The notes below the pieces were generated by a model. The model had not been told where the DNA came from. It worked only from the letters and a program-made list of their open reading frames with translations, and searched no databases. From positions 62,001 through 126,000 of IMG/VR virus record IMGVR_UViG_3300007513_000001: 64,000 nucleotides of DNA; one strand, written 5' to 3'. A program made the position numbers and the translations under genes. Shown one piece after another: positions 15,424-64,000 of the stretch; position 1 is the first letter of the stretch; each line of letters begins with the position of its first letter.

Positions 15424-18400
15424 ATGGCATCAGATTTTAGAGCAGAAAGAGTAAGATTAAATAAAATTATTACTTCAGGAAGTGCACCCAACAGCAGACC
15501 AATGTTTGCGCTTTATCATTCTAGCGCTGCTACTAATTTTACTGGTGGAACAAATGTCGATCTATGGACCGGTGTCGGGAAAGATGTGTACGCATTCTTT
15601 TCTGGATCTAAAGATCACAAGAATGTTATAACTGGACGAGGAGTCACTCTTTTTGGAGGTGATGTTGTAGTCTCAGGTACCTTATATGCTGATAAGCAAG
15701 TTATCGAAATAGAAGAATCAGTTACGGGAAGCCTTACAGTTTCTGGATCTCTCATAGTTTCTCAAAGCATCACAGCTGGACAAAACTTACATGTAAATTC
15801 GGTCGGTGGAGCATTTGGATTCGCAAACTTTGGATCTACGGCAGGGACTGGTGGTTATGGTTTCCGAGATTCTGGTGGCACCATGCAATTTAAAAACAGC
15901 GGTGGTGCTTGGGCTGCGTTTGGAGCGTCTGGTGGCGGCAGCGCAAGTGATGTTGGCTGGATAGGACCACAGGCTGGCAAAATCATTACCACCGGATCTG
16001 TTGGAATATCTGGTTCTTTGGTTGTATCTGGAACAACGTTAGATATTCATGAATCTATCCGAGAGATTGGATTCGAGACTACGAATTATCATAAATTTAA
16101 TAATGACGGGCAGTCATTCTACGCCAAGGGCGGTAAGAGGATGCTTGACTTAACGTCAATAACTAGCCAAGATCAAGTCACCGTGAATATAGCTGGTCTG
16201 GATGTAGATTTTAGAGTAGAATCATTCAACAAGTCGAAAGCCCTTTATGTAGATGCGAGTGAAGATAGAGTATCAATTTTATCTGGTTCTTTAAATACTG
16301 ATGCGAATGGTGATGATGTTGCATTCTTCGTTTCAGGGTCTATAGGAGGCCAAGCCGCGGCCGACAGGGGAGTTTCACTCTTTGGTGGCGATTTAGTAAC
16401 GTCGGGTGTTCTACATGTTCAAGGTACAACAGATCTACCAGGGACCACTATTTCGGCAGGAATAGTTTTAGATTCTGCACCGGAAAGTGCTATTGTTTGG
16501 GATTCATCTCCAGCGCCAATCCCAGATGCTTACATTTACGAAAATGGTGGTAGCCTTTTTATAAGCGCTTCAAATCAAATTGAAATTGAAGCGCAAACAG
16601 CAGCCAAGATTCGAGGATATGGTCTTGAATATGCTGCTTTTGCTTCTTTTACCGGACAAAAAGCAGCTGCTTTCAACCGCTCCAACGAAGATATCGATTT
16701 TAGAGTCGGGAACACTTCATTGGATGCCACACTTTGGGTAAATGCCGCAGAAAAAACTGTAAACATCGATAGAGGCTTATCTGATTCTATACCCGGGCCC
16801 GATATCAACTTCTACGTCTCTGGAAGTATTGGCGGCAAAGATCAAGCCGCAAGAGGGGTATCATTATTTGGTGGAGATTTAGTCGTCAGTGGTGGTATGC
16901 ATGTTGACACTACTACATTCGTGGTTGATCAGAGTAACAACAGAGTTGGCGTTGGAACTAATTTACCAAACGCTAAAATGAATATCACTAGTGACGTTAG
17001 TGGCGAAACTATCCTATCAGTTGAACAGCATAATAATAACAGCGATGCACCCAATCTAGAATTTGTTAAAAGCAGAGGAACGTATGCTGCACCGGGTAAA
17101 GTTGGCTCTGGAGACTTTTTGGGTCATGTTCAATTTAAAGGGTATGACGGTAGCTCTGAAGAACAATTCGCGGCATTTTATGCTGAAACTTTTGGAACGA
17201 TTAATGCCGGTTCACACCCAGCTAAAATCGTGCTCAAGACGTGCCCAGCCGGCTCTACAACTTTGGGCAATTCTGCTATTTTCAATGGTGGACTCGGCGG
17301 AACAATATCTGGGTCTATTCATGAAACGGTTGATGGTGTATCATATCTTGTTGCAGGAACTAACGTAACAATAACCTCAGCTTCTAATGGTCAAGTTACG
17401 ATTAACTCCACAGCAGTAGGAACCGTTGATGGATCAGGTGTCGCTGGTAGGGTTGCTTTCTGGCAAGATTCAGATACCCTGACATCAGATGCTGACTTAA
17501 CATTCGACGGAACCGACTTGGGTGTCGGCAACAAAATAGTCCATGTGGGTGATGCAGATACCTATATCAACTTTACAGATGATGACATAAATATCTCGGT
17601 CGGTGGTGTCAACATGGTTGACTTTACTGAGAATGCTGTATCGCAAGACGAAATAACTTTTAATGAAGCTGGTGCTGATCTTGACTTTAGAGTTGAGTCC
17701 GATGATAATGATCACATGTTCTTTATCAATGCAGACGATAATAGAATCAGCATCGGTACTCAAGGAAACAACCCGCAGTCAGTTGTTCATATTAAAGATA
17801 CCTCTCCTGAAGTACGAATACAGAGAGCACTCAATGCACAAGATTCAGTAATAAGTTTTGCAGGTAGTGGTGGTGTTCGCGGAAGCATGACAGGTTTAGC
17901 GGGTGGAACAAATGATATAGTCTTTAAGACCTTTAATGGTGCCGCTCTAGAAGAAACAGCACGGTTTGGTGGTGATTACTCGGGCGAAGTAAGAAGAGTT
18001 ATATTCTTGTCCGGATCATCGATGCATGCAGGGGCAATGCAGCCAACAGAGACATCGGATATCAATTTCTTCGTATCTGGTTCAGAGGGCTCGATGGGTG
18101 GTGGGTCACGAGGAACAGCAACATTCGGTGGCGATTTAGTTGTTAGTGGCGGAATGGCGGTTGATGAGGACACATTCTTTGTTGATCAAGCAAACAATAG
18201 AATTGGTGTTGGAACTAGATCTCCCAACGCAAAAATAAATGTTACTAGTAATGTATCTGGTGAAACTTTAGTTTCAATTGAACAGCATAATAGTGACAAT
18301 GGCGATGCTCCAAACCTAGAATTTGTTAAAAGTAGAGGTACCTATGATGCACCTTCTGTTATTACTTCTGGAGATTTTCTTGGAGACGTTCAGTTTAAAG

Positions 18401-19815
18401 CTTACGACGGAAACAGCGAAGATCAATGGGCCGGATTTTATGTGCAGTCTTATGGTACTGTAAGCAATTCATCGCATCCTGCAAAATTAGTAGTTAGATC
18501 ATGCGCTGAAGGTTCAACCTTGCTTAGTACTGCGGCTATTTTCAATGGTGGGCTCGGAGGAACAATATCAGGCTCTATCCATGAAACAGTTGGTGGCGTA
18601 TCATACCTTGTTGCAGGAACTAACGTAACAATAACCTCAGCTTCTAATGGTCAAGTTACGATAGCTTCCACCGGAGGTGGAGGAAGCTCCCCATGGACAG
18701 ACGCGGGATCGTGGTTATATCCAACTGCTGATGAGTCTATTGTAGTTGGTGGAACCACCATGGCTAATAGCGATGCTGTAATTGGGGGTACTAATGGTGA
18801 TGCTGAATTTAATAAACAGCAGCAATCTACAGGTGATTTTAGAATTAGATCGCAGAATGCTCCATATGCATTTTTTGTTGATGCATCTACCAATGTAGTA
18901 AACGTCCATGCGGACGCTACCGAAATTCCTGGCACTGACGCAAACTTTTTTGTCTCTGGTAGTACTACTGGTGATTATGGTACAGCTGTATTTGGTGGCA
19001 ACGCAGTTGTCAGTGGTACTCTTTACGTAAAAGGTTCAACTAACGACGGATCTGGAGGCAACCGTGCTTGGTCTAGCCTTGTATTATCATATGGAATCGG
19101 TTTTGATGATGGTGATGCTTGGATATATGAAGATGGCAATGATTTATATGTAGCAGGAAGAACTGATACATTTATAAGCGCTTCTGATGATATCAGCCTC
19201 GAGGCCGGAGATGACTTATTTATTGATGTTGGTGATGACATTAAAATTAAATCAGGAAACGGTGGATTTTTTGCAGCAGGCACTGACACATATCTACATG
19301 TATCCGGAGCAATTGGTGGTCATAACACCACTGGATCTAATGGTATCGCTCAAAGCGTAGTTGCTTTTGGTGGAGATGTAGTAATATCTGGATCGATGAG
19401 ATCTAAACAGATTGAAATATTCAAATCTTCTTATGTTGAAGGTAGCACTGGAAATTCTGTATTTATTCCAATGATGGGTTCAAATGTCGAAGCCGCCGGT
19501 GCTGATTATCGAAGAATGTTTGTAGCTCCATTTAACGGAAGACTTATTAAAGTTCTTTGGCGGCCAGAAAATGCGCAATCAAATGATTTCATTTCTGAAA
19601 TTTGGGTAGGCAGCGATGGAGATTCAGACCCTGGCACTTTGGCCGAGAGAGTCCAAAAGCCGGCAGCTAATGCGGTTTGGACTACTAATCCAGCTGGATT
19701 TACAAGTACAAGTCACTTTATGGCTGGCCAAGTTGTAGGTGTTAAAATTAATCCATCAGATGCTCCAGGCGCATGCAACGTAACGATGATATTCGAATTT
19801 GATATGTTTATCTAG
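15424..19815 (+). CDS. Large repeat-built virion fibre/tail-associated protein (1463 aa)
   Basis: G/S/T/V/D-rich beta-strand composition; six F(F/Y)VSGS...FGGDxVxSG units, four DFR(V/I)xS units, and one ~200-aa duplicated block. Confidence 0.75.
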   Translation: MASDFRAERVRLNKIITSGSAPNSRPMFALYHSSAATNFTGGTNVDLWTGVGKDVYAFFSGSKDHKNVITGRGVTLFGGDVVVSGTLYADKQVIEIEESVTGSLTVSGSLIVSQSITAGQNLHVNSVGGAFGFANFGSTAGTGGYGFRDSGGTMQFKNSGGAWAAFGASGGGSASDVGWIGPQAGKIITTGSVGISGSLVVSGTTLDIHESIREIGFETTNYHKFNNDGQSFYAKGGKRMLDLTSITSQDQVTVNIAGLDVDFRVESFNKSKALYVDASEDRVSILSGSLNTDANGDDVAFFVSGSIGGQAAADRGVSLFGGDLVTSGVLHVQGTTDLPGTTISAGIVLDSAPESAIVWDSSPAPIPDAYIYENGGSLFISASNQIEIEAQTAAKIRGYGLEYAAFASFTGQKAAAFNRSNEDIDFRVGNTSLDATLWVNAAEKTVNIDRGLSDSIPGPDINFYVSGSIGGKDQAARGVSLFGGDLVVSGGMHVDTTTFVVDQSNNRVGVGTNLPNAKMNITSDVSGETILSVEQHNNNSDAPNLEFVKSRGTYAAPGKVGSGDFLGHVQFKGYDGSSEEQFAAFYAETFGTINAGSHPAKIVLKTCPAGSTTLGNSAIFNGGLGGTISGSIHETVDGVSYLVAGTNVTITSASNGQVTINSTAVGTVDGSGVAGRVAFWQDSDTLTSDADLTFDGTDLGVGNKIVHVGDADTYINFTDDDINISVGGVNMVDFTENAVSQDEITFNEAGADLDFRVESDDNDHMFFINADDNRISIGTQGNNPQSVVHIKDTSPEVRIQRALNAQDSVISFAGSGGVRGSMTGLAGGTNDIVFKTFNGAALEETARFGGDYSGEVRRVIFLSGSSMHAGAMQPTETSDINFFVSGSEGSMGGGSRGTATFGGDLVVSGGMAVDEDTFFVDQANNRIGVGTRSPNAKINVTSNVSGETLVSIEQHNSDNGDAPNLEFVKSRGTYDAPSVITSGDFLGDVQFKAYDGNSEDQWAGFYVQSYGTVSNSSHPAKLVVRSCAEGSTLLSTAAIFNGGLGGTISGSIHETVGGVSYLVAGTNVTITSASNGQVTIASTGGGGSSPWTDAGSWLYPTADESIVVGGTTMANSDAVIGGTNGDAEFNKQQQSTGDFRIRSQNAPYAFFVDASTNVVNVHADATEIPGTDANFFVSGSTTGDYGTAVFGGNAVVSGTLYVKGSTNDGSGGNRAWSSLVLSYGIGFDDGDAWIYEDGNDLYVAGRTDTFISASDDISLEAGDDLFIDVGDDIKIKSGNGGFFAAGTDTYLHVSGAIGGHNTTGSNGIAQSVVAFGGDVVISGSMRSKQIEIFKSSYVEGSTGNSVFIPMMGSNVEAAGADYRRMFVAPFNGRLIKVLWRPENAQSNDFISEIWVGSDGDSDPGTLAERVQKPAANAVWTTNPAGFTSTSHFMAGQVVGVKINPSDAPGACNVTMIFEFDMFI
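16801..17402 (+). repeat. Internal ~600-nt duplicated block, copy 1 (copy 2 at 18058-18662)
   Basis: Collinear protein repeat, e.g. DAPNLEFVKSRGTY, SGDFLG.VQFK.YDG, AIFNGGLGGTISGSIHETV.GVSYLVAGTNVTITSASNGQVTI. Confidence 0.9.
18058..18662 (+). repeat. Internal duplicated block, copy 2; the last 56 nt (18607-18662) are identical to 17347-17402
   Basis: Direct nucleotide comparison; the offset is 1257 at the start of the block and 1260 at the end (one-codon indel). Confidence 0.9.
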
Positions 19816-20048: not shown

Positions 20049-21986
20049 ATGCTAAGCAATTCGCCGTTTGAGACACCTCAGTCTCCAAAACTTAAAGTTC
20101 CTGAAGATGCAGAAGTCGTTTTTGTTTCTGATATGTTTGTTGAAGATTATGTCGGTGGAGCCGAACTTACGTCAGAAGCTATTATATCTTCATCTCCACT
20201 AAAAGTATTTAAACTGCACAGCAAAGATGTGACCATCGAAACTCTAGAGCAGGGACACCAAAAGTATTGGATATTTGGTAATTTTTCTGCTCTTAATATG
20301 GATCTAATACCTTCAATCGTTTCAAACATGAATTATTCTATCTTAGAATATGATTATAAATTTTGTAGATATCGCTCTCCAGAAAAACATGAAACTGAAA
20401 CCGGAGCTCCATGCGATTGTATTGAAGATATTCATGGCAAAATGATATCTGCATTTTATTATGGATCTAAGTCTCTTTGGTGGATGTCTGAAAAACAGAT
20501 GGATTTGTATCTTGAAGCGTATCCATTTTTGGCTGAAAGAGAAAACACCGTTTTGAGTAGTGTTTTTGATGATGCTTTCTTTTATTCAGTTAAGATTTTG
20601 AGAGAAAAATATAAGGATCAAGAGAAAACAGGTTGGCTAGTTTTAGGATCTAATAGCTGGATCAAAGGCGCTGATCAAGCAGAGCAATGGTGTAAAGATA
20701 ACGAAAGAGAATATGAAGTTGTTTGGAATCTAAAGTATGAAGAGCTCTTAGAAAAGCTAGCACAATCTGAAGGTTTCGTTTATCTTCCTAAGGGAAACGA
20801 CACATGCCCAAGAATGGTAATTGAAGCCAAGCTACTTGGCTGTGATTTACACTTAAATGATTATGTTCAGCACAAAGATGAGATTTGGTTTGATACCGAA
20901 GATATGTTCGATACAGAAGCATATCTCTATGCAGCTAGAGAAAGATTTTGGAACGCTATTTTAGCGACAATGAATTATGTGCCGACTATTTCTGGTTATA
21001 CCACTACTTTAAACTGTATAAAGCACAAATATCCATTTGAGGCTTCTATTAAGAGTATGTTGGGTTTTTGCGAAGAAGTTATTGTAGTTGACGGTGGTAG
21101 CGATGATGGAACTTATGAAAGGCTTAGAGAGTTAGAAAAAGAAGATAAAAGAATAAAAGTAAGTTTAGTGCTTAGAGATTGGGAAGATACTAGATTCGCC
21201 GTTTATGATGGTGCTCAAAAAGCAGTATCCCGAGATCAGTGCACAATGGACTACTGCTGGCAGCAAGATGCAGATGAGGTTGTTCACGAAGAAGATTATC
21301 AAAAAATTATTCATACAACAAGAAACTTTCCAAGGCAGTACGATCTTCTTTCTTTACCGGTTATCGAATATTGGGGAAGTTCTTCTAAAGTTAGAGCAGA
21401 TATCAATCCGTGGAAGTGGAGATTATCAAAAAATAAACCATACATTTCTCATGGCATACCAAAAGCTTTAAGAAGAACAGACAGTGACGGAAAACTATAT
21501 GCTGCTCCAGGGACCGATGGGTGTGATTACATCCACAAAGAGTCTTACGAGCCAATTCCGCACATTGGCTTTTATACTGAAGAAATTCACAAAGTAAAAA
21601 TGATGGCGTTTTCTGGAAACTCTGAAGCTTTCGAAGCTTATGAAGCTTGGTTCAACAGAGTGGTAGAACTACTACCTTCAGTACACCACTACTCGTGGAT
21701 AGACATCGGAAGAAAGATTAGAACATACAGGGATTATTGGTCTCAACATTGGCAAAGTTTATATGATATACCTCAAGAAGACACCCCAGAAAATAACATG
21801 TTTTTAGATACTTCTTGGGCAGATTCAACTGAAGAAGATATAGAAAATACTGCGAAAAAGCTTTCTGAAGAAATGGGTGGATGGGTATTCCACTCCAAGG
21901 TAGATTATAGTAATCCTACTCCCCACTTCAAGATTGATCAGACTCAACCAGCTTTAGCTATTGAGCATTATGGTGAGGAAAAATAA
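20049..21986 (+). CDS. Two-domain glycosyltransferase (GT-B/GT4-like N-terminus, GT-A/GT2 C-terminus)
   Basis: CPRMVIEAKLLGC (GT4-type C-terminal motif); VIVVDGGSDDGT and QQDADE (GT2). Confidence 0.8.
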   Translation: MLSNSPFETPQSPKLKVPEDAEVVFVSDMFVEDYVGGAELTSEAIISSSPLKVFKLHSKDVTIETLEQGHQKYWIFGNFSALNMDLIPSIVSNMNYSILEYDYKFCRYRSPEKHETETGAPCDCIEDIHGKMISAFYYGSKSLWWMSEKQMDLYLEAYPFLAERENTVLSSVFDDAFFYSVKILREKYKDQEKTGWLVLGSNSWIKGADQAEQWCKDNEREYEVVWNLKYEELLEKLAQSEGFVYLPKGNDTCPRMVIEAKLLGCDLHLNDYVQHKDEIWFDTEDMFDTEAYLYAARERFWNAILATMNYVPTISGYTTTLNCIKHKYPFEASIKSMLGFCEEVIVVDGGSDDGTYERLRELEKEDKRIKVSLVLRDWEDTRFAVYDGAQKAVSRDQCTMDYCWQQDADEVVHEEDYQKIIHTTRNFPRQYDLLSLPVIEYWGSSSKVRADINPWKWRLSKNKPYISHGIPKALRRTDSDGKLYAAPGTDGCDYIHKESYEPIPHIGFYTEEIHKVKMMAFSGNSEAFEAYEAWFNRVVELLPSVHHYSWIDIGRKIRTYRDYWSQHWQSLYDIPQEDTPENNMFLDTSWADSTEEDIENTAKKLSEEMGGWVFHSKVDYSNPTPHFKIDQTQPALAIEHYGEEK

Positions 21987-23651: not shown

Positions 23652-23659
23652 ATTTTATA

Positions 23660-34484: not shown

Positions 34485-34487
34485 ATA

Positions 34488-55591: not shown

Positions 55592-55593
55592 TT

Positions 55594-57441
55594 TTGTCAG
55601 TCGACTCTTCAAAAATAGTAGCCAAAACATCACAAAAATCTTATCTTGCAAAAGATTTCGTTGCTTTCAGACGAGATTTGATAAAGTATGCCAAAACTTT
55701 CTTTCCTGATAAGATTCAAGATTTTTCAGAAGCAAGCCTCGGAGGCCTTTTAGTCGAAATGGCTGCTTACGTTGGCGATACAATGTCGTTTTATTTAGAT
55801 TATCAGTTTAACGAGCTAAATCCGATTACTGCTATTGAGCCTTCTAATATCATAATGCATGCAAAAAATGCGGGGGTTCCAATCGCAGGCGCAGCACCCT
55901 CAGTTTGCACGCTAACGTTTTACATATCTGCCCCAGCTGAAATTTCTGATTCTGGCGATTATACGCCTGTAATATCCGCTCTTCCCATGATTAAAAAAGA
56001 AACTCAATTAAAATCTAATTCTGGAATCGTTTTTACTTTAGTAGAAGATTGTGATTTTGCAGAAACTGATGATTATGGAAATTTAATAGCGACGTATACT
56101 ACTTCAGAAGTAGACGACTCTAATAATCCGACAAGTTTTATCCTTACTAAAGAAGCAACAATTATATCTGGGAAAATTATAACTCAATCTTTTAAAATAC
56201 CCAACGTTCTTAAACCATTTAGAAAAATTACTTTATCTAATCAAGATGTAAGTCAAATTATTAGAGTAAAAGATTCAGAAAGAAACTTATATTATAAAGT
56301 AGAATCCTTAGCAGAAGATACCGTTTTTAAAGCAGTCCAAAATTTAGATGATGAAAAAAATCTTGTAACTTCTAATTTAGAAGTCATACCAGCACCGTAT
56401 CGATACGTAACTAACACCGATTTCAGAACTAGGATTACAACTATTCAGTTTGGCTCTGGAGACGCGAGCGCGCCAGATGACGACATTATTCCAGACCTTA
56501 GTGTTTTAGCTCTCCCACTTTACGGCACAACAACAATGCCTCGATTTTCTATAGATCCGAATGCTTTATTAAGAACCTCCACACTTGGAATAGCGCCAGT
56601 TAACACTTCAATTGAGGTCATGTATCGATATGGTGGAGGGTCCACTCACAACGTATCTGCAGAGTCTATTAGAACTATCAAATCTTTAGAGATTATGTTT
56701 CCAGAAAATCCGAGCTCTTCAGTTCAGGATTCTGTAATTCAATCTTTGGATGTTAAAAACTTAGTTCCCGCTTCCGGTGGAGCGCCTCCATTATCTATTG
56801 AAGGGCTCAAAGCTTTAATTCAATCAGCTAGAAACCAACAAGCTAGAATTGTTACGCAGCAAGATTTATTAGCTAGACTCTACACTCTTCCAAATACTTT
56901 TGGGAGAATTTTTAGAGCAGGAATTCACCATAACCCCGATAATCCACTGTCGTCTAATCTTTACATTATAGCTAGAGACGCTAATTTAAATTTAGTAATT
57001 GCTCCCGACGCTCTAAAAATAAATATTTCAAAATATCTCAACGAGTTCCGATTAGTTTCTGATGCGGTAGATATTTTAGATGCCACTGTTATAAATTATG
57101 GAGTTAATTTTTCTGTTGTTTGCTCACCAGATGCAAATAAAAGTACGGTTATCCAAAATGTGATAAATGCTATAAAAGAAGTTTCTGATATAAAATATTT
57201 TCAGATAGACCAGCCAATTGTAGAGAGCGATGTAATTAATGCGATTATTAATACAGACGGAGTTTTATCTTTAGTAGATTTAGAATTCATCAACTATTCA
57301 GGTACAGTGGGGGCTAATTCATACAGCGACTACGAGCATGATTTAGAAGAAAACAAGCATAAAGGCCTTTTCATCGGGCCAGAAGGCTGCATATTCGAAA
57401 TGAAGTATCCTGATTCTGTAATAATAGGAACGGCGCAATAG
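55594..57441 (+). CDS. Baseplate wedge protein, gp6/baseplate-J-like (TTG start)
   Basis: YLAKDF...LIKYAKTFFP...DFSEASLGGLLVEMAAYVGD.MSFYLD; IQFGSG; R.VT.QD. Confidence 0.85.
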   Translation: MSVDSSKIVAKTSQKSYLAKDFVAFRRDLIKYAKTFFPDKIQDFSEASLGGLLVEMAAYVGDTMSFYLDYQFNELNPITAIEPSNIIMHAKNAGVPIAGAAPSVCTLTFYISAPAEISDSGDYTPVISALPMIKKETQLKSNSGIVFTLVEDCDFAETDDYGNLIATYTTSEVDDSNNPTSFILTKEATIISGKIITQSFKIPNVLKPFRKITLSNQDVSQIIRVKDSERNLYYKVESLAEDTVFKAVQNLDDEKNLVTSNLEVIPAPYRYVTNTDFRTRITTIQFGSGDASAPDDDIIPDLSVLALPLYGTTTMPRFSIDPNALLRTSTLGIAPVNTSIEVMYRYGGGSTHNVSAESIRTIKSLEIMFPENPSSSVQDSVIQSLDVKNLVPASGGAPPLSIEGLKALIQSARNQQARIVTQQDLLARLYTLPNTFGRIFRAGIHHNPDNPLSSNLYIIARDANLNLVIAPDALKINISKYLNEFRLVSDAVDILDATVINYGVNFSVVCSPDANKSTVIQNVINAIKEVSDIKYFQIDQPIVESDVINAIINTDGVLSLVDLEFINYSGTVGANSYSDYEHDLEENKHKGLFIGPEGCIFEMKYPDSVIIGTAQ

Positions 57442-57448
57442 GAATAAA

Positions 57449-58984
57449 ATGTATTTAATTTTGACAGCTAGCAAAAGCACTTATATTACTAATAAAATAA
57501 TAGACAATAAGTTTAGAGCTACTGATGCGAATGTTGGAAGAGCCGGAACCTTAGACCTTTTTAAGCTATACAACGAGTCTTCTCTTTCTGGATCAAATTA
57601 CCCTATTGAGCTTTCTAGAATTCTTTTAAAGTTTAATTTCGACACCATTCAAAGCTTGACAGCTTCTAAATTAGACGTAAATTCTAATACATTTAGGGCT
57701 AGACTTAGACTGTTCGACGTTTACGCTGGACAAGGGGTGCCAAAAAACTTTAAAGCGATAGTGTATCCACTTTCAAAATCTTTCGACGAGGGTGTCGGAA
57801 GAGATGTAGCAGCATTTCAAGACATAGATGTTGCTAATTGGATAACCGCCTCTTATTCTAATAGCTCAGCCAATGTTTGGGAAGTTACGGGCGCTAACCA
57901 CGGTGGCCTACTTGGATCTACTGATATAGACTATATTTCTTCTGGGTCTTTGGGCTCTGGAGTAGTAGACCTTGGAAAAGTTCAGCTTTTCAAAAAAGGC
58001 AGCGAAGATTTAGATATTGATATTACTACTATAGTTTCTGGTGTATTGAGCGATCAAATACCGAATATGGGGCTCAGGATTTCTTTTAGTGGCTCTCAAG
58101 AAACGGATACGAAAACTAGATTTGTTAAGAGGTTTGGATCAAGACACGTGTCAGATCCATTTAAAGCTCCACAGCTTCATATTAGCTATGATGACAGTAT
58201 TATCGACCACCACGAAGACTTTATTTTTGACGTGAGTGGATCTATATTTTTAAATAATTTTCACCGGGGAACTCCTGCTAATATCTTATCTGGAACTGCT
58301 GCTTCCGAGCTTTCTGGCAATAACTGCATAATGCTTAGGTTAGAAAAACAAGATCTAGCTCTTTATTTTACCGGATCTCAACATACAGATGGCACTTCTA
58401 GCACTGGAGCTAAGGGTTTATATTCTGCTTCTTTCGCTGTTTCTTTAAACGAAGCTACAAAAGTTAACACTACTCAAAGATTATTAGACCTCGCGTACAA
58501 GAGCGGCTCTGTTGAATTTGACGAATATTGGACATCGATAGACGGAACAGTTGGGTATTATACAGGCAGCTTAGAAGTAAAGCTACCCTATAGAACATCT
58601 TACAATTATGCTCCAGCTGATTTATTTTTCCACTTTACCAATATGGAAAAATCTTATAACTCTTTAGATGTAGCTAAGCTCAATATTTTTATAAGAAATT
58701 TTGAAATAAAAGATAAAGCTAGTAAACTTCCGTATTCTAGAAAGAGTATAATTTTATCGCAAGTTTATTATAGGATAAGAAATCAGAGTACTGGTAAAAC
58801 AGTTATTCCTTTTGATTCATCTACCGGAGGCACTAAACTTTCTTCTAATAGCGGAGGATTAAGTTTTGAGCTCCGTTGTGAATCGCTCCCACGCGGCCAT
58901 GTATACGTAATAGATTTGTTAGTAAAAGACTTTGATCAAAATAGAATATATGAAGCAGCGAGCCCAAGCTTTAAGGTGAACTAA
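57449..58984 (+). CDS. Virion structural protein (SGS-rich)
   Basis: Position after baseplate J; beta-rich; 11 [S/T][G/A]S motifs. Confidence 0.6.
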   Translation: MYLILTASKSTYITNKIIDNKFRATDANVGRAGTLDLFKLYNESSLSGSNYPIELSRILLKFNFDTIQSLTASKLDVNSNTFRARLRLFDVYAGQGVPKNFKAIVYPLSKSFDEGVGRDVAAFQDIDVANWITASYSNSSANVWEVTGANHGGLLGSTDIDYISSGSLGSGVVDLGKVQLFKKGSEDLDIDITTIVSGVLSDQIPNMGLRISFSGSQETDTKTRFVKRFGSRHVSDPFKAPQLHISYDDSIIDHHEDFIFDVSGSIFLNNFHRGTPANILSGTAASELSGNNCIMLRLEKQDLALYFTGSQHTDGTSSTGAKGLYSASFAVSLNEATKVNTTQRLLDLAYKSGSVEFDEYWTSIDGTVGYYTGSLEVKLPYRTSYNYAPADLFFHFTNMEKSYNSLDVAKLNIFIRNFEIKDKASKLPYSRKSIILSQVYYRIRNQSTGKTVIPFDSSTGGTKLSSNSGGLSFELRCESLPRGHVYVIDLLVKDFDQNRIYEAASPSFKVN

Positions 58985-61900
58985 TGGCAAAACGCCCCAC
59001 AAGCTTTTTCACTAGGGGAGGTCTTTTTTCTCCTCGGCTTGTAACAAAAATAACAGAAGAAGATCCAACAGTTCTAAAGAAAGACACTGGGGATTTATCT
59101 GGGTCTTTAATTGGCGGAGATTCATTTGAGTTTGATGCTCCTGGCGCACCTTTAAAAAGCACGCAACAAATACCTTTAGATTGGTCTGATTTTGTTAATC
59201 ACACATTTTTTAATTCAGCCGAGTCAAAAGTAAACGTTACTTTTGATACAGTTATTAACTACTTTCCATTCGATGGAAAACAGGGCGACATTGATCTTTT
59301 TATGGAAAATCTCACGGGATTTGAAAAATGGGTATTTGATAAATGGCCAAAGCATCTGGGGTGGCTTTTCTTTTCGGGGTCTGATGACGGACCCCCAACA
59401 GAGGGAAGCTACATCAGAATAAAAGATACCGCGGGTATTCTTTATCCTTCGCTTTCTACGAGAAGAGACGCCGCAACTGTTTTAGACCCCGGAACAAAAA
59501 GCTTTTCAATAGAGTTTTATATTCATGTTCCGAATGAAGCCAATGGCAGGCAAGTTGTATTTCAAAAAATAAATGATCCCAATGGGGTGGCCTCGGTCGG
59601 TGGATACACTATCGGCTTATCGCCTAGCGCCCATTTAAAGAATACACAGCTGAAGTTCGGAATATCAAGCGGATCAACATCTCAAACAGTTACTGCACGC
59701 ATCCCTCGGGGTGGGTGGAGACACATCGCGTGTGTTTATGATAGAAATACGACTGACATACCACAGATGAGAATATATCTTTCTGGTAATTTAGTAGCTT
59801 CATCTTCAAACTCCGCAGCGATGGGATCTTTTGCGGGCGGCGCTAGCGATCTATTGATTGGTTCTGGGTCTAAGCATCTCTCGATCGGCTTTTGGCCAAA
59901 CCAAACTTTTTCTGGTTCCTTAGACGAAGTAAAAATATTCCAAGGGCTAAGAACTCAAAAACAGATTAAGACCGAAATGAGCGCTAGCGTACAGCCATCG
60001 CCGCAGCTAAAGGCTTATTTTAAGTTTAATGAAGCTACTGGTTCTTATCCAAACAACAATATAGTCCTCGATGCGTCAGGAAATTCTCTTCATTCTAGAA
60101 TAGAAAATTTTGATTATACGCTTCGGGACTTACGTGATCTAACTCGGCCTGTATTATACGAATACGAGTCAAAAAACCCAGTTTTATTCCCGGCACAACC
60201 CGATGTCGTAGCTCTTAATGTTGACTTATTATATTCTGCAAGTTTATATGATGCTAATAACCCAAACTTAATCACTAAGTTAATACCAGCACATTATTTA
60301 TTAGAAGCTTCAACAACAGAAGGCTACGATGACGAATATGCTGGTAGAGGCGACGCATATTCTTATACGAAAGATTTTCCAGGTGGCGGCAAGATGGGAT
60401 CACCGCAAATTATTGCATCTTTACTTTTTACTTGGGCAAAATTTTTCGATGAAATAAAAGTTTATATAGATCAATTTGGTGACTTGCTTAAAATGGATTA
60501 CGATAGCGAAGGCACAATTTCAGATCAAATGTTGCTGTTTTTTGCTAACCATTATGGGTTCGATCTTCCTACTAATTTTGCCAATGCTAATATAGCTCAG
60601 TTTCACTTTGGTAAAAATCTTAATTATGAGCCATCTCTTTCTCAAAAAACACTGAGAAGAATTCAGGATGAAATATGGCGTAGGATGCTCACAAACCTCA
60701 ATCACGTTATTAGATCCAAGGGGACAATGCATGGTATAAAAGCCTTGATGCGTGCTTCTGGCATAAATCCAGAAAGTAATTTTAGATTTAGGGAGTTCGG
60801 AGGATCTAAGACTGTAACTACCGCTGACTCTAGAAGAAAATTAACGCAAGTCTCAAAGATGCTCAGTTTAACTGGATCTTTTTCTTCTATTAAATCTCCA
60901 TTTTTGAGCGGTTCGAGAAATACTGTTGGCTGGCCAACTCCGCAAGGGACGTTCATGAAAACAGCCGCAGATATTAAAACTTATGGAATCCACGGAGTTT
61001 CTAACGCTAGAAGTGATGGATTGTTTACTACTGCGTCTTGGACTTATGAAGGAATATATTCATTTTCTAACTTAAATAGATCTACAACACCGCCCACTCA
61101 AAGCTTGATGAGAATGTATACAACCGGAGCTCATGTCTCTACTGCAAACGAGGGCTGTATCATGAATTTAGTGGCTTGTGGTACTGGATCTGGTCTTTAT
61201 GAATCAGGGTCAATAAATTTATTTGTTCGCTCAGGAAGAAATGCAGATTCTCCATTACTTCACTTATACGTTCACGGAGTTAATTTATTTGATGGAAACA
61301 AGTGGCATGTTTCAGCAGGAAGAGATATAGGAACTTCTACTGGTTCATATACTTCCGCTTCTTATTTTGTTAGGGCTGGTAGACAGAGTGGCGGAACGAT
61401 AGAAGAATATCATTACACATCTTCATATTGGAAAGCTGATGCGCCAATCCATGATGTTTTTAGCACATACTCAGAAGATTATAATTCTTCTGGATGTTTT
61501 TTCGTAGTTGGCTCTTCTTCTTTTAGCAATACTTCTGGCGATAGATTTCTAAATTCAACTTCAAAAGTTGGTAACAATCTAGCAAGAACTTCAGTTACTG
61601 CTGGTGAAACGGCAAGAATAAGGTTTTGGACTAAAGCTTTGACGCACAACGAAACAAAAGAGCACTTAAGAAACTTTAAGTCTTTGGGCGTCGAAAATCC
61701 ATTAGTAAATTTCAACTTTGATACAGTGGTTTCGGGTGCATTTGAAAGGTTAAGAATAGATGCGGGCATCGATCAAATAGTTACGAGATCAGGACCGACT
61801 GGAGAAATTGCTATTTTTGATTTTAGCCAAAACAAGATGCACCTCTCAGGAACACAGTTTGAGCCTTCTGTTAGAGTGATTCATCCGAGATATTTTCAAT

Positions 61901-62475
61901 TTTCAACTTTAGACCCTAAGTGGGACGAAAGATCTGCAGAAAACAAGATAAGAGTCCAAGGCTTTAAGAAAGACATAAACATAGAGCAGTTTAACGCCAT
62001 GAAAGCTCCTGTGAGTAAAGTCAGAGCTGAGAACGCGGCATTCGACGATACCAGGTTTAGTATTGAAGTTTCCGCTGTTCGAGCTTTAAATGAAGACATT
62101 GTTCTCATTATGTCTTCATTAGACTTTTTTAATAATGCTATCGGAAGTCCAGAGCTTCAGTTTGCTGTATCTTATCCCGAGTTAGAAAAAATGCGAAGGA
62201 TATATTTTAATAGGCTAGATAAAAAAATGAGTTTCAAACAACTGTTTGAATTCTTTAAATGGTTTGATGATTCTCTTTCAATCATGATTGAAAGGCTAGT
62301 ACCACGCCACACTAATTTCCTCGGCATTAACTTTGTAATAGAGTCTCATATGCTAGAAAGAAATAAGATGTGCTATGCATCTCAAGCTGCCGTATATCTC
62401 GGAGAAGAAGATAGAAGACAGCTACAGACTGATTTGCTGCTTAGACAAATTGTGATAAACTTGAGGAAGATGTAA
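58984..62475 (+). CDS. Large baseplate/tail protein with LamG-like jellyroll domains
   Basis: FSIEFYIH, WRHIACVYD, FSGSLDEVKIF (LamG); KGTMHGIKALMR (baseplate wedge-like); C-terminal GINFVIESH.LER. Confidence 0.7.
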   Translation: MAKRPTSFFTRGGLFSPRLVTKITEEDPTVLKKDTGDLSGSLIGGDSFEFDAPGAPLKSTQQIPLDWSDFVNHTFFNSAESKVNVTFDTVINYFPFDGKQGDIDLFMENLTGFEKWVFDKWPKHLGWLFFSGSDDGPPTEGSYIRIKDTAGILYPSLSTRRDAATVLDPGTKSFSIEFYIHVPNEANGRQVVFQKINDPNGVASVGGYTIGLSPSAHLKNTQLKFGISSGSTSQTVTARIPRGGWRHIACVYDRNTTDIPQMRIYLSGNLVASSSNSAAMGSFAGGASDLLIGSGSKHLSIGFWPNQTFSGSLDEVKIFQGLRTQKQIKTEMSASVQPSPQLKAYFKFNEATGSYPNNNIVLDASGNSLHSRIENFDYTLRDLRDLTRPVLYEYESKNPVLFPAQPDVVALNVDLLYSASLYDANNPNLITKLIPAHYLLEASTTEGYDDEYAGRGDAYSYTKDFPGGGKMGSPQIIASLLFTWAKFFDEIKVYIDQFGDLLKMDYDSEGTISDQMLLFFANHYGFDLPTNFANANIAQFHFGKNLNYEPSLSQKTLRRIQDEIWRRMLTNLNHVIRSKGTMHGIKALMRASGINPESNFRFREFGGSKTVTTADSRRKLTQVSKMLSLTGSFSSIKSPFLSGSRNTVGWPTPQGTFMKTAADIKTYGIHGVSNARSDGLFTTASWTYEGIYSFSNLNRSTTPPTQSLMRMYTTGAHVSTANEGCIMNLVACGTGSGLYESGSINLFVRSGRNADSPLLHLYVHGVNLFDGNKWHVSAGRDIGTSTGSYTSASYFVRAGRQSGGTIEEYHYTSSYWKADAPIHDVFSTYSEDYNSSGCFFVVGSSSFSNTSGDRFLNSTSKVGNNLARTSVTAGETARIRFWTKALTHNETKEHLRNFKSLGVENPLVNFNFDTVVSGAFERLRIDAGIDQIVTRSGPTGEIAIFDFSQNKMHLSGTQFEPSVRVIHPRYFQFSTLDPKWDERSAENKIRVQGFKKDINIEQFNAMKAPVSKVRAENAAFDDTRFSIEVSAVRALNEDIVLIMSSLDFFNNAIGSPELQFAVSYPELEKMRRIYFNRLDKKMSFKQLFEFFKWFDDSLSIMIERLVPRHTNFLGINFVIESHMLERNKMCYASQAAVYLGEEDRRQLQTDLLLRQIVINLRKM

Positions 62476-64000
62476 TGGCTAGTACTGTATATCCGCCACT
62501 AACAGCGTCTTACCCATTCGTCCAAGGATTAAATGTAAAGACTTTTAACATTTTCTCTCAACGACTCATCGGGACCGTGGGTAGAAACTCTAGATCTAAA
62601 ATAGTGTCTCTCAAGACAGTGGTTTCAAGTTCTACTAGAGGCCATAATTTACCCGCTGGAGGCTCTGGTTACAAGATAATAAACCAATCTATGCCTGGGT
62701 ATTTCGATGATTCTCTCTATTCGCAACAGGGAGTTACTGTAGAAAAAGGCTCGGGCCCAGCAACTAATTCTTATGTCACGATCGAAGTATTAACCGCTTC
62801 ATGGACGCAGACCGGCTCTCCATTTATTGAAATTCAGGTTTGGGATAATTCAAATCTTTCTTCTGGTGGAGCAGAAGAAATGACTCACGGAACTGGATCT
62901 GGTGGAACAGAAATCGATGGAGTACAAAGATGGACTAATGACTCTAGTGCATATACAGTTAATGACGGCATGTTTGGGGTGTATGGAAGCGAAACTGGGA
63001 CGGACGCGGGGTTCGGTGATGCACATAGGTACACCATAGGAACACCGGTATTTTGCATAACTGGAAGTGATGGAACAACAGTTACAGGCTCACAACATGT
63101 GGCGCAAGATTTATGGACTGTGCTGTCGGGAGCCGTGTATTATGGCAGGGATGGCTATGGTATACCAGGCTATTCTAGTGGATGGAATAATGGTCCGGTT
63201 TTCGAAATGGCCAGTCGCTGGTCTGGATTACCTTTAAATGTTGAATATGCACCAAACGGCTTAAGAAATGTAGTAAGAGTATCCGCAGCATCAGGCAGCA
63301 TTACAATTGGCATTACTTCTTCTTTTCCAGAAGATGCAATAAGAGTAACTTCTGTACCTGCTGGCACGGCCGAAGCATCATTTGCCTCCGAAGTAGGGAT
63401 CGCTTCCTTTTCAGAAACTGAAGGCTCTCTAACCTTTTTGCCACAGTATAATTTAGAAATTGCAAATTTTGGGTACGATCAACCAGAAACTTATGAACCA
63501 TTCGTAGAAAAAGTTTCTCTCCTCGGCCGTGGTTTGTCGGACGGAGGAGGCTTATTTACGAGTGTGGGATCTGGATCTGAAAAGGGCGCTGTTTCTGTAA
63601 GAGCTTCTCAAATGTTCGCTAAAAAATCGGACAATTATTCTGCTGGGGTAGCTAGCTCTAAACATCCCTTTGCCGAGAAGGAAGCTTTCCTGAGGACGAA
63701 ATTTAATAAAGCAGTAAATGTAGAGCATCCTGGAAAACTTTATCTTGTCAGTCAATTTATTTCTGGCGCAGAGTTAAACTATGGCACCGAAGGTTCACCA
63801 TCTTATTTTTATACAGAGGGATTAAAATTCTTTCATTACGATTATGATATAGCTCAAATACCGGGCAGTCGATATGATATAAAAAATAAATTCTATTGGA
63901 ATGGAATAATAGAGCCTTTGGACATAAGAAAAGAAATAACGGGCCTGCATACTTTTGTTGGCGATTTCTATGATCCAATTTCAAACACTCTTAAAGGGTC
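62475..64000 (+). CDS. Virion structural protein, 3'-truncated and absent from the supplied ORF track
   Basis: TAATG stop/start overlap at 62473-62477; hand translation (MASTVYPPLTASYPF...NGIIEPLDIR...) finds no stop in ~508 codons to the window end. Confidence 0.8.
   Translation, partial: MASTVYPPLTASYPFVQGLNVKTFNIFSQRLIGTVGRNSRSKIVSLKTVVSSSTRGHNLPAGGSGYKIINQSMPGYFDDSLYSQQGVTVEKGSGPATNSYVTIEVLTASWTQTGSPFIEIQVWDNSNLSSGGAEEMTHGTGSGGTEIDGVQRWTNDSSAYTVNDGMFGVYGSETGTDAGFGDAHRYTIGTPVFCITGSDGTTVTGSQHVAQDLWTVLSGAVYYGRDGYGIPGYSSGWNNGPVFEMASRWSGLPLNVEYAPNGLRNVVRVSAASGSITIGITSSFPEDAIRVTSVPAGTAEASFASEVGIASFSETEGSLTFLPQYNLEIANFGYDQPETYEPFVEKVSLLGRGLSDGGGLFTSVGSGSEKGAVSVRASQMFAKKSDNYSAGVASSKHPFAEKEAFLRTKFNKAVNVEHPGKLYLVSQFISGAELNYGTEGSPSYFYTEGLKFFHYDYDIAQIPGSRYDIKNKFYWNGIIEPLDIRKEITGLHTFVGDFYDPISNTLKG

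What the first reader, a model, noticed from the sequence alone, without database searches (positions are those of the whole stretch)
15424..64000. [S/T]-[G/A]-S motif enriched in specific virion proteins flanking the glycan island: candidate O-glycosylation sequon
Seen (hand counts): about 21 motifs in the 1463-aa fibre, 11 in the 511-aa protein (57449), about 14 in the 1163-aa LamG protein and about 8 in the truncated last ORF. There are none in the 615-aa baseplate-J protein and one in the 646-aa PrkA. A rough composition estimate gives only 1-2 expected in the 511-aa protein. The motif is often flanked by hydrophobic residues (VSGSI, FTGSQ, YSASF, LTASY). These genes bracket a 31-kb glycosylation island. 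Inference: the phage GTs decorate a self-encoded sequon on exposed virion proteins, giving a phage-autonomous protein glycosylation system (a glycan shield or receptor mimicry). A purely structural beta-turn role is the main alternative.
Basis: partly seen in the sequence, partly recalled or inferred. Interest (0 to 1): 0.72.

Follow-up and report, generated by a model that had tools for sequence, protein, structure and literature searches.

The report
Serine-glycine-serine motif in phage tail proteins
The outer tail, baseplate and fibre proteins of this 293-kb marine phage and its distant cultured relatives carry many times more copies of a short hydrophobic-Ser/Thr-Gly/Ala-Ser-hydrophobic motif than chance allows, and unrelated phages do not; this fits a phage-encoded protein-glycosylation site but does not prove one.

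Summary
[ST][GA]S occurs 21, 11, 15 and 8 times in the four named proteins. Shuffles give 6.7, 1.6, 2.8 and 2.1, and shuffling within 10-40-residue blocks does not remove the excess. TGS and SGS are the most over-represented well-populated tripeptides; the permutations GSS and SSG are not enriched. Only G or A is favoured at the centre, and the third residue is Ser, not Thr. The full form is hydrophobic-[ST]-[GA]-S-hydrophobic (57 seen, 4.9 expected).

The excess covers at least 11 virion proteins from several unrelated families, reaching about 65 kb past the window. It recurs in an uncultured relative, Flavobacterium phage immuto, Microcystis phage Mel-JY01 and, less specifically, Rhodothermus phage RM378. 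It is absent from T4, cyanophage S-TIM5 and phiKZ.

All enriched genomes share a conserved GT4 glycosyltransferase. In this clade it is a tandem pair just upstream of the baseplate genes, predicted to form a heterodimer. The 31-kb island is a mosaic, variable add-on with no membrane proteins.

Glycosylation is the best-fitting explanation (about 0.4), but all evidence is correlative and from related phages. A lineage-specific structural strand motif is nearly as likely.

The parts
15424..19815 (+). 1463-aa fibre-like virion protein with 21 [ST][GA]S motifs. Several sit in a recurring D-x-x-F-[FY]-V-S-G-S unit.
   Evidence: Counts and shuffles. Part of it is homologous to the S-TIM5 tail fibre protein and to phrog_5906. 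It is only 51% identical in the close relative G001, whose neighbouring genes are 82-90% identical.
20049..47983 (+). Variable glycan-synthesis island. It encodes GT2, GT4, GT9-like and GT29-like transferases. It also encodes NeuB, cytidylyltransferases, a PseB-like dehydratase, a DegT aminotransferase and two formyltransferases. Further genes are an HldE-like kinase and adenylyltransferase, a carbamoyltransferase, a UDP-glucose dehydrogenase and epimerases.
   Evidence: Pfam hits. No transmembrane proteins. Gene content is mosaic among relatives.
48018..48839 (+). PD-(D/E)XK nuclease, conserved immediately upstream of the GT4 pair.
   Evidence: PF12705, E=5e-23. The same position is kept in G003, immuto, Mel-JY01 and LR756508. 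It is detected in 28 of the 34 clade loci with enough upstream flank; in most of the other six the flank ends near the GT4 genes.
48935..50185 (+). GT4a, a conserved core glycosyltransferase with an intact EX7E motif.
   Evidence: PF00534. It is 61-68% identical across most of the clade (58-100% over all 34 loci), more conserved than the structural proteins. Homologues occur in immuto, Mel-JY01, RM378 and LR756508 but not in T4 or S-TIM5. EX7E motif.
50182..51345 (+). GT4b, the second GT4. It overlaps GT4a by 4 bases, keeps the EX7E motif and is predicted to form a heterodimer with GT4a.
   Evidence: Pfam and EX7E. Orthologues in G003, immuto and Mel-JY01. Complex prediction scored 0.85 against a best control of 0.01.
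55100..57441 (+). gp25-like and gp6/J-like inner baseplate wedge proteins, which are motif-free.
   Evidence: phrog_43 and phrog_219. The gp6-like protein has 0 motifs here and in immuto and Mel-JY01.
57449..58984 (+). 511-aa baseplate-associated multi-beta-sandwich protein with 11 motifs.
   Evidence: More than 1698 homologues. Nine of the 11 sites are kept in most of 46 homologues. AF2 model has pLDDT 78. The fold resembles carbohydrate-binding-module and Ig/FN3 sandwiches.
58984..62475 (+). 1163-aa LamG-domain virion protein with 15 motifs.
   Evidence: PF13385 at residues 169-329. Counts.
62475..64000 (+). 5' part of an 868-aa distal virion protein whose ORF ends at window-equivalent position 65081. 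It has 8 motifs in the window and 10 in full.
   Evidence: It is only 37% identical in G001, so it is hypervariable.

Best explanation
The motif hydrophobic-[ST]-[G>A]-S-hydrophobic is kept at high density on the outer virion proteins: fibres, peripheral baseplate proteins, the insert domains of the sheath and the N-terminal extension of the capsid protein. I propose it is the acceptor site of a phage-encoded cytoplasmic O-glycosylation system.

In this model (inferred) the conserved soluble GT4a/GT4b complex, encoded just upstream of the baseplate operon, adds the first sugar to one or both serine/threonine hydroxyls. The variable island then supplies nucleotide sugars (nonulosonic acid, heptose, formylated amino sugars) and further transferases that build a strain-specific glycan.

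Shown here: the statistical signature, its sequence specificity, its conservation and turnover, its distribution among phages, the soluble nature of the island proteins and the predicted GT4a-GT4b heterodimer. Inferred only: that any serine is modified, which enzyme does it, and what the glycan is for (shielding or adhesion).
For: 1. Specificity. [ST][GA]S is 166 against 55.7 (z=15) in the 11 enriched proteins. The flanked form is 57 against 4.9 (z=24). [ST][GA]T and centres S, N or D are not enriched. Only G (3.5-7.4x) and A (2.2-3.3x) are favoured at the centre in this phage, immuto and Mel-JY01.

2. Same scaffold, different occupancy. Hydrophobic-x-[GA]-x-hydrophobic is about equally common in all ten genomes (9-18 per 1000 aa). 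Joint occupancy by [ST] and S relative to expectation is 6.4x here, 3.8x in G003, 10.8x in immuto, 5.1x in Mel-JY01 and 4.9x in RM378. It is 0.4x in T4, 0.7x in S-TIM5 and 0.7x in phiKZ.

3. Not one duplicated domain. blastp and jackhmmer sort the enriched proteins into separate families.

4. Conservation together with turnover. Nine of 11 sites in the 511-aa protein are kept down to 47% identity. The immuto and Mel-JY01 homologues carry their excess at other positions. Sites unique to this genome, compared with G003, number 43 against 15 expected. The 42 non-enriched orthologue pairs show 28 against 26.

5. Co-occurrence with the enzyme. Every enriched genome encodes GT4a, and T4 and S-TIM5 do not. 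All 34 clade loci with enough upstream flank have GT4a and GT4b directly before the baseplate genes.

6. Enzyme features. Both GT4s keep the EX7E motif and the island has no membrane proteins, so there is no flippase, polymerase or oligosaccharyltransferase. The GT4a-GT4b complex scored 0.85 against a best control of 0.01; that mark was reached by 51 of 78 solved complexes and 2 of 108 mismatched pairs.

7. Location. The sheath motifs lie mostly in the insert region. All 4 capsid-protein motifs lie in the N-terminal extension, outside the region matched by the major-head-protein profile. The inner gp6-like wedge protein has none in three genomes.

8. The signal acts on protein, not DNA: 88 distinct 9-mers encode 166 sites.
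Against: There is no direct evidence of modification.

The sites have hydrophobic flanks and lie largely inside beta-strands. That is atypical for O-glycosylation and fits a packing or strand-kink role equally well.

All positive genomes are related, so the co-occurrence of enzyme and motif may be shared ancestry.

GT4a always sits next to a nuclease. In RM378 and Mel-JY01 it lies among DNA-metabolism genes, which suggests it could act on DNA or nucleotides.

GT4a's nearest solved relatives act on small molecules, and no similarity to known protein O-glycosyltransferases was found.

RM378 has the motif excess but no recognisable GT4b, and its S-x-S excess is less specific. LR756508 has GT4a but only a weak signal of 1.6-2x.

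Surface exposure of the serines could not be computed.
Confidence: 0.4

Rival explanations
1. The motif is a lineage-specific structural micro-motif with no modification. An [ST]-G-S element, such as an ST-turn or beta-bulge within or at the end of a strand, would be favoured in the beta-sandwich and fibre domains this phage group uses. The glycosyltransferases would then serve another target: host surface glycans, DNA or small molecules.
For: The motif has hydrophobic flanks and a small central residue. In the model 6 of 11 sites are in strands and 2 at strand ends. Positions are strongly conserved within the clade, with Gly invariant at some sites. One LamG site matches the generic F-x-G-x-[LI]-D-E strand of that fold. 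The co-occurrence with GT4a is phylogenetically confounded. GT4a lies next to nucleases.
Against: The same hydrophobic-x-[GA]-x-hydrophobic scaffold is equally frequent in T4, S-TIM5 and phiKZ, but there the [ST]/S occupancy is at or below chance.

The excess occurs in several families with no detectable homology.

Distant orthologues fold without the motif at the same positions and carry it elsewhere.

Ser is required at the third position, although Thr has the higher strand propensity by general protein-structure knowledge; [ST][GA]T is not enriched.

S-TIM5 shares a fibre domain with this phage yet shows no excess.
Confidence: 0.35
2. The motif is recognised by some other lineage-specific trans-acting factor. 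This could be a different modification (phosphorylation, acylation) or an assembly chaperone that binds exposed strands of tail and fibre subunits.
For: The signature looks like a trans-acting one: many unrelated proteins, turnover with density maintained, and restriction to one lineage.
Against: No candidate factor tracks the motif. The PrkA-SpoVR-DUF444 trio is absent from immuto and Mel-JY01, which have the motif. The only conserved enzyme found here with a matching distribution is GT4a.
Confidence: 0.1
3. The excess is a statistical artefact of serine/glycine-rich composition or of internal repeats in giant fibre proteins.
For: The fibre and the 2349-aa protein contain internal repeats that reuse motif-bearing units. 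These proteins are rich in S, T and G.
Against: Block shuffles preserve the significance. The permutations GSS and SSG are not enriched. The repeat-free 511-aa protein has 11 motifs against 1.6 expected. In the fibre 19 of 21 motif contexts are distinct. S/G/T-rich giant proteins of S-TIM5 show no excess.
Confidence: 0.03

Closest known systems
Mycobacteriophage virion O-glycosylation (Freeman et al. 2023, Cell Host Microbe, PMC10527164, as cited and summarised in PMC12619734)
   Same: Phage-encoded glycosyltransferases lie beside structural genes. Cytoplasmic glycosylation of the phage's own virion proteins is the proposed logic.
   Different: In mycobacteriophages the glycans sit on the C-termini of capsid and tail-tube subunits. 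Here the candidate sites are internal, strand-embedded and spread over fibres, baseplate and sheath inserts. The phage lineage is also different, and nothing has been shown experimentally here.
Autotransporter heptosyltransferases (BAHT: TibC, Aah), which modify serines in beta-helix repeats (from my own knowledge of that literature)
   Same: A soluble cytoplasmic enzyme modifies serines presented by a short strand-loop-strand structural motif in a beta-rich protein, not a disordered sequon. The island also encodes a GT9-like protein and HldE-like heptose-activation enzymes.
   Different: The GT9-like ORF shows no sequence similarity to TibC among solved structures. It is missing from G003, immuto and Mel-JY01, which still have the motif.
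GtfA/GtfB O-GlcNAc transferase of serine-rich-repeat adhesins (from my own knowledge)
   Same: Two adjacent GT4-fold proteins are predicted to form a heterocomplex. The acceptor is rich in S-A-S/S-G-S-like triplets.
   Different: Both phage proteins keep the catalytic EX7E motif, whereas GtfB is non-catalytic. No sequence match to GtfA was found in the PDB search. The substrates here are folded beta domains, not disordered repeats.
Flagellin O-glycosylation with pseudaminic or legionaminic acid (Maf-type; from my own knowledge)
   Same: A nonulosonic-acid pathway is present in the island: NeuB, a PseB-like dehydratase, an aminotransferase and a cytidylyltransferase. The acceptor Ser/Thr residues lie in a locally hydrophobic context on an exposed domain.
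   Different: Pfam detected no Maf-family transferase in the island. The nonulosonic-acid cassette is not conserved in G003, immuto or Mel-JY01.
Virus-encoded glycosylation in chloroviruses and mimiviruses (from my own knowledge)
   Same: Virus-encoded soluble transferases and sugar pathways decorate the virus's own structural proteins or fibrils. GT4a has a weak match to chlorovirus glycosyltransferase B736L (3oy2, E=4e-6).
   Different: Those are eukaryotic viruses with different sequons and different enzymes.

Membership tests
Phage-autonomous virion O-glycosylation (mycobacteriophage type) | Phage-encoded glycosyltransferases adjacent to virion structural genes | tested here: met
   GT4a and GT4b lie directly upstream of the baseplate operon in all 34 clade loci with enough flank. 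The island lies between the fibre and the baseplate genes.
Phage-autonomous virion O-glycosylation (mycobacteriophage type) | Glycans attached at the C-termini of capsid and tail-tube subunits | tested here: not met
   The candidate sites are internal and spread along fibre, baseplate and sheath proteins. They are not clustered at C-termini.
Phage-autonomous virion O-glycosylation (mycobacteriophage type) | Glycan demonstrated on virion proteins | not testable with these tools
   This needs glycoproteomics or glycan staining of virions.
BAHT autotransporter heptosyltransferase system | TibC/Aah-family enzyme | tested here: not met
   The GT9-like ORF at 26396-27253 matches only part of PF01075. 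It has no TibC-like hit among solved structures and is not conserved in motif-bearing relatives.
BAHT autotransporter heptosyltransferase system | Acceptor serine in a strand-short loop-strand structural motif | tested here: inconclusive
   In the AF2 model of the 511-aa protein the motifs lie in strands or at strand ends. No coordinates were available to define the local geometry.
GtfA/GtfB-type two-protein O-glycosyltransferase | Two adjacent GT4-fold proteins forming a complex | tested here: met
   The genes overlap by 4 bases. The complex score was 0.85 against a best control of 0.01; the mark was reached by 51 of 78 solved complexes and 2 of 108 mismatches. This is a prediction, not a measurement.
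GtfA/GtfB-type two-protein O-glycosyltransferase | One catalytic and one non-catalytic subunit; sequence kinship to GtfA/GtfB | tested here: not met
   Both proteins keep EX7E. Neither matched GtfA or GtfB in the PDB searches at E<=0.01.
Maf-type nonulosonic-acid protein glycosylation | Nonulosonic-acid biosynthesis genes | tested here: met
   NeuB, a PseB-like Polysacc_synt_2 protein, a DegT aminotransferase and cytidylyltransferases are present. They are not conserved in distant relatives.
Maf-type nonulosonic-acid protein glycosylation | Maf-family transferase | tested here: not met
   Pfam detected no such family in any island ORF. Several ORFs remain unannotated.
Bacteroidota general O-glycosylation | Sequon D-[ST]-[AILVMT] enriched on target proteins | tested here: not met
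   45 observed against 57.4 expected in the enriched proteins.
N-linked glycosylation | N-x-[ST] enriched | tested here: not met
   159 observed against 153.8 expected.

The most novel reading that the evidence does not exclude
A conserved heterodimeric GT4 enzyme recognises a strand-embedded hydrophobic-[ST]-G-S-hydrophobic sequon. It O-glycosylates dozens of sites per subunit on fibres, the baseplate periphery, sheath inserts and the capsid extension. This would operate across a cosmopolitan phage group spanning marine jumbo phages and phages of Flavobacterium, Microcystis and Rhodothermus. Hypervariable glycan islands would then build strain-specific glycans on that conserved primer, making a protein-glycosylation system with its own sequon that is native to phages.
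Probability: 0.3. Interest if true: 0.85.

Novelty: new variant of a known kind. Interest (0 to 1): 0.62.

Why it matters
If the motif is a glycosylation site, it would be the first sequence-defined sequon for phage self-glycosylation. It would also extend virion glycosylation from mycobacteriophages to an abundant aquatic phage group with more than 1,600 homologues of the 511-aa protein in metagenomes.

It would explain why these phages carry large, mosaic glycan islands that lack any export machinery. It would also provide a simple sequence statistic for predicting glycosylated virion proteins.

The idea can be tested now, because three relatives with the same signature are in culture: immuto, Mel-JY01 and RM378.

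If the motif proves purely structural, it is still an unusual lineage-specific strand motif that separates this group from T4-like, S-TIM5-like and phiKZ-like phages.

Tried and rejected
- **Closest records.** Megablast of the baseplate region and tblastn of the 511-aa protein against the phage collection found nothing. The gp6-like and GT4a proteins were needed to find cultured relatives.
- **Local composition.** Rejected by block shuffles.
- **Any order of small residues.** Rejected, because GSS and SSG are about 0.9x.
- **Serine on alternate exposed strand positions in general.** Rejected for this phage, immuto and Mel-JY01: only G or A at the centre is enriched and hydrophobic centres are about 1x. 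It is not rejected for RM378, where L, F, Y, T and H centres are also about 2x or more (H 3.55x).
- **A DNA-level motif.** Rejected, because 88 distinct 9-mers encode the sites and codon use is ordinary.
- **One duplicated domain.** Rejected at blastp and jackhmmer sensitivity. Similarity at the level of fold cannot be excluded.
- **The LamG F-x-G-x-L-D-E strand.** It explains only one of the 15 sites in the LamG protein.
- **Known sequons.** D-[ST]-[AILVMT] and N-x-[ST] are not enriched.
- **PrkA kinase as the cause.** Rejected, because the trio is absent from immuto and Mel-JY01.
- **GT9-like/HldE-like genes as a BAHT system.** No TibC similarity was found and the genes are not conserved.
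- **hmC/hmU-type DNA glycosylation as the GT4 role.** ThyA-family genes are not consistently present in the five enriched genomes. This is weak evidence only.
- **Global hmmalign of the distant homologues.** It failed and was replaced by the local hmmsearch alignments.
- **LR756508.** It has GT4a but no adjacent GT4b, and shows 15 against 7.5 in its baseplate/fibre region and 1.6x in the scaffold test. That is too weak to count either way, and only 260 of its 484 kb were fetched.
- **P-SSM2.** Its single enriched ORF is a collagen/His-Ser-Gly low-complexity fibre, a different context.
- **Literature.** Searches found no report of glycosylated virions for immuto, Mel-JY01 or RM378.
- **Solvent exposure.** It could not be computed, because the structure tool returns secondary structure but no coordinates.


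Full report
**Setting**

The window is positions 62001-126000 of a 293,409-bp virus record with direct terminal repeats, so it is a complete jumbo phage. GC content is about 0.36 and almost every gene in the window lies on the + strand.

Gene order across the window is as follows.
- Helicase, cytidylyltransferase and HD-domain genes, then a DUF444-SpoVR-PrkA trio.
- A weak tubulin/FtsZ-like ORF and a PIN-PhoH fusion.
- The 1463-aa fibre-like protein (15424-19815).
- A glycan-synthesis island (20049-47983).
- A PD-(D/E)XK nuclease (48018-48839) and two GT4 glycosyltransferases (48935-50185 and 50182-51345).
- A baseplate module: gp25-like (55100-55591), gp6/J-like (55594-57441), the 511-aa protein, a 1163-aa LamG protein and an 868-aa protein that runs off the window.

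Yes. Counts of [ST][GA]S are 21, 11, 15 and 8 in the four named proteins, against 6.7, 1.6, 2.8 and 2.1 in 1000 shuffles. The gp6-like protein has 0 and PrkA has 1.

Shuffling only within 10-, 20- or 40-residue blocks keeps local composition. It leaves p<=0.0005 for the first three proteins and p=0.001-0.0065 for the fourth.

Across the whole genome, with 316 ORFs called, the total is 278 against 165 expected. The surplus lies almost entirely in about 11 large + strand proteins between genome positions 77 and 190 kb. These include two tail sheath paralogs. The capsid protein carries 4 motifs, all in its N-terminal extension, though its own count is not significant. The rest of the proteome is at expectation.

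**What exactly is enriched?**

- In the 11 proteins TGS (53 against 13.9) and SGS (62 against 18.5) are the most over-represented tripeptides with meaningful counts. GSS and SSG are at 0.9-1.0x.
- Pooled, [ST][GA]S is 166 against 55.7 (z=15).
- [ST][GA]T is not enriched (54 against 42). Centres S, N and D are not enriched either.
- Over all 20 possible central residues, only G (3.5x) and A (2.2x) stand out. The same holds in two cultured relatives.
- Flanks are hydrophobic: 65% at -1, 50% at -2 and 51% at +3, against a 31% background. Charged residues are depleted upstream.
- The flanked form, hydrophobic-[ST]-[GA]-S-hydrophobic, is 57 against 4.9 (z=24).
- Codons are diverse: 88 distinct 9-mers encode 166 sites. 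The signal therefore acts on protein, not DNA.

**Is it one repeated domain?**

Only partly. The fibre, the 2349-aa protein and the 699-aa protein share a repeat module, and the two sheath proteins are paralogs. The 511-aa, LamG, 868-aa, 1866-aa, 461-aa and 844-aa proteins show no mutual blastp similarity, apart from a C-terminal match between the last two. Iterated profile searches keep the families separate. The generic LamG strand F-x-G-x-L-D-E accounts for just one site.

**Conservation and turnover**

The 511-aa protein has more than 1698 homologues, all uncultured and many from marine samples. In an alignment of 46 of them, down to 47% identity, 9 of the 11 sites are kept in most sequences. 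Position 0 is S or T, position 1 is G, A or S, and position 2 is almost always S. Every homologue has 6-14 motifs against 1.1-2.2 expected.

At greater distance the positions are not kept. The immuto and Mel-JY01 homologues (22-26% identity) align S-D-E or other residues at these sites, yet carry 5 and 4 motifs of their own against 0.8 and 0.6 expected.

Between this genome and relative G003, the enriched orthologues hold 70 and 50 motifs, of which 27 share a position. The 43 sites unique to this genome alone exceed the total chance expectation of 15. The 42 other orthologue pairs show 28 against 26. Motif density is therefore maintained while individual sites turn over.

**Structure**

An AlphaFold2 model of the 511-aa protein (pLDDT 78) is a chain of beta-sandwich domains. 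Its best structural matches are carbohydrate-binding modules and Ig/FN3-like arrays. Six motifs lie inside strands, two at strand ends and three in loops. The motif is therefore not a beta-turn signature.

The tool gives no coordinates, so solvent exposure could not be computed. The strand pattern of hydrophobic -1, small +1 and hydrophobic +3 suggests by inference that the two hydroxyls face away from that hydrophobic side.

**Comparison across phages**

The gp6-like and GT4a proteins identified distant cultured relatives at about 30% identity. These are Flavobacterium phage immuto, Microcystis phage Mel-JY01, Rhodothermus phage RM378 and the uncultured 484-kb record LR756508. Whole genomes were fetched and analysed with one ORF caller. 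The last column is the joint [ST]/S occupancy of the hydrophobic-x-[GA]-x-hydrophobic scaffold relative to expectation. That scaffold itself is about equally frequent everywhere, at 9-18 per 1000 aa.

| Genome | Motifs observed / expected | ORFs at p<0.01 | Scaffold occupancy |
|---|---|---|---|
| This phage | 278 / 165 | 11 | 6.4x |
| G003 (uncultured relative) | 227 / 152 | 9 | 3.8x |
| Immuto | 176 / 86 | 10 | 10.8x |
| Mel-JY01 | 174 / 85 | 12 | 5.1x |
| RM378 | 80 / 36 | 7 | 4.9x |
| P-SSM2 | 177 / 143 | 1 | 1.9x |
| LR756508 (first 200 kb) | 76 / 59 | 1 | 1.6x |
| S-TIM5 | 110 / 102 | 0 | 0.7x |
| phiKZ | 65 / 76 | 0 | 0.7x |
| T4 | 44 / 56 | 0 | 0.4x |

- S-TIM5 shows no excess although it has twelve proteins over 900 aa and a fibre domain homologous to the window's fibre.
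- The single enriched P-SSM2 ORF is a low-complexity collagen/His-Ser-Gly fibre, which is a different context.
- The baseplate/fibre modules of immuto and Mel-JY01 alone give 97 against 25 and 56 against 11.
- The gp6-like protein is motif-free in this phage, immuto and Mel-JY01.
- RM378 is less specific, because several other central residues are also about 2x or more there.

**The glycosyltransferases**

The island encodes the following.
- Three GT2 enzymes, two GT4-type enzymes, and GT9-like and GT29-like transferases.
- NeuB, a PseB-like dehydratase, a DegT aminotransferase and two formyltransferases.
- Cytidylyltransferases and an HldE-like kinase and adenylyltransferase.
- A carbamoyltransferase, a UDP-glucose dehydrogenase and several epimerases.

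No island protein has transmembrane segments, so no flippase, polymerase, ligase or oligosaccharyltransferase is present.

The island is mosaic. G001, whose 511-aa protein is 84% identical, keeps the synteny but has cassettes replaced; its NeuB is only 42% identical. G002 and G003 share only parts of the island, and immuto and Mel-JY01 share almost none.

The nuclease-GT4a-GT4b block behaves differently. It is conserved in G003, immuto and Mel-JY01. GT4a and GT4b lie directly upstream of the baseplate genes in all 34 clade loci with enough flank, and the nuclease is detected in 28 of them. GT4a is 61-68% identical in most of these loci, against about 48% for the structural proteins.

Both GT4s keep the EX7E motif. 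Their genes overlap by 4 bases. The pair is predicted to form a heterodimer: score 0.85 against a best control of 0.01, a mark reached by 51 of 78 solved complexes and 2 of 108 mismatched pairs.

T4 and S-TIM5 have no GT4a homologue. RM378 has GT4a beside a 5'-3' exonuclease but no recognisable GT4b. LR756508 has the nuclease and GT4a only.

**Interpretation**

A short, order-specific, Ser-specific motif is maintained in density, with site turnover, across unrelated outer virion proteins of one phage group. The same structural scaffold in other phages is not occupied this way. That pattern is what a trans-acting recognition system would produce. The only conserved enzyme found with a matching distribution is GT4a, paired with GT4b in this clade.

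With an all-soluble glycan island beside the structural genes, the most economical model is cytoplasmic O-glycosylation of virion proteins at this motif. I give it about 0.4.

Four points count against it.
- The sites are hydrophobic and strand-embedded.
- There is no similarity to known protein O-glycosyltransferases.
- GT4a is constantly adjacent to a nuclease and, in RM378 and Mel-JY01, lies in a DNA-metabolism neighbourhood. It may therefore act on DNA or nucleotides. ThyA-family genes are not consistently present, which argues only weakly against hmC/hmU-type DNA glycosylation.
- All positive genomes are related to one another.

A lineage-specific structural micro-motif is nearly as likely, at about 0.35.

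**Relation to what is known**

Phage virion glycosylation has been shown for mycobacteriophages, at the C-termini of capsid and tail-tube subunits (Freeman et al. 2023, as summarised in PMC12619734). That paper on large aquatic "moraphages", which it relates to a Rhodothermus phage, reports four putative glycosyltransferase families among orthologous groups shared by at least 80% of the genomes, with their function left open. I did not test whether this phage belongs to that group.

The strand-embedded acceptor idea resembles the BAHT heptosyltransferases. The tandem GT4 complex resembles GtfA/GtfB. The nonulosonic-acid genes and hydrophobic site context resemble flagellin glycosylation. In each case at least one defining feature of membership was tested here and not met, as set out in the membership table. 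If real, this is a new variant of phage self-glycosylation with its own sequon.

**Verdict**

The decisive experiments are feasible on three cultured relatives.

Noticed in passing
window 2556-6992: A complete DUF444 (YeaH-like)-SpoVR-PrkA trio is encoded by the phage. It is conserved at 55-71% identity in relative G003 and absent from immuto and Mel-JY01.
   Followed up: partly
window 11834-13006: A 390-aa ORF has a weak Tubulin/FtsZ GTPase-domain hit (PF00091, E=3e-5, below the curated cut-off). A 75% identical homologue exists in G003. It may be a phage tubulin.
   Followed up: no
window 13519-14808: A PIN-domain/PhoH fusion protein. The PhoH part is shared with immuto and Mel-JY01.
   Followed up: no
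window 20049-47983 compared with G001 (L192-L194) and G002 (L195-L197): The glycan island is a mosaic between conserved flanks. In G001 the NeuB homologue is only 42% identical and the PseB-like and formyltransferase cassette is missing, while the flanking genes are 80-90% identical. G002 shares the heptose/GT9 and PseB/DegT/formyltransferase cassettes but not NeuB or GT29.
   Followed up: partly
window 15424-19815 and 62475-64000 (ORF ends at 65081): The fibre is 51% identical and the last ORF 37% identical in G001, while their neighbours are 71-95% identical. They are probably the receptor-binding, host-range-determining proteins.
   Followed up: no
genome 183880-187044 and 187086-190235 (L148:7880-14235); genome 176269-178167 and 178261-180150: There are two tail sheath paralogs of about 1050 aa (35% identical) with large inserts, and two adjacent capsid-protein-like paralogs of about 630 aa.
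   Followed up: partly
genome 146000-149332 (L147:2000-5332): A 1110-aa ORF has a HINT/intein-like domain near its N-terminus (PF07591, E=2e-5, below the curated cut-off).
   Followed up: no
window 48018-50185; immuto 47964-50570; Mel-JY01 81375-84932; LR756508 303690-306748; RM378 8212-10619: GT4a lies next to or within about 1.2 kb of a nuclease in all these distant phages (in Mel-JY01 a GuaB gene intervenes). It is a PD-(D/E)XK nuclease in four lineages and a 5'-3' exonuclease in RM378. This linkage is unexplained and could mean the GT4 acts on DNA or nucleotides.
   Followed up: partly
Mel-JY01 (PP395634.1) 83441-84932: The GT4a homologue is annotated as two ORFs of 190 and 302 aa. This may be a frameshift or a split gene.
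   Followed up: no
immuto (MW353176.1) 97614-100775: The annotated tail spike protein (1053 aa) holds 53 motifs against 12 expected. Many belong to a recurring [ST]-A-S-[YF]-A unit, an A-centred variant of the motif.
   Followed up: no
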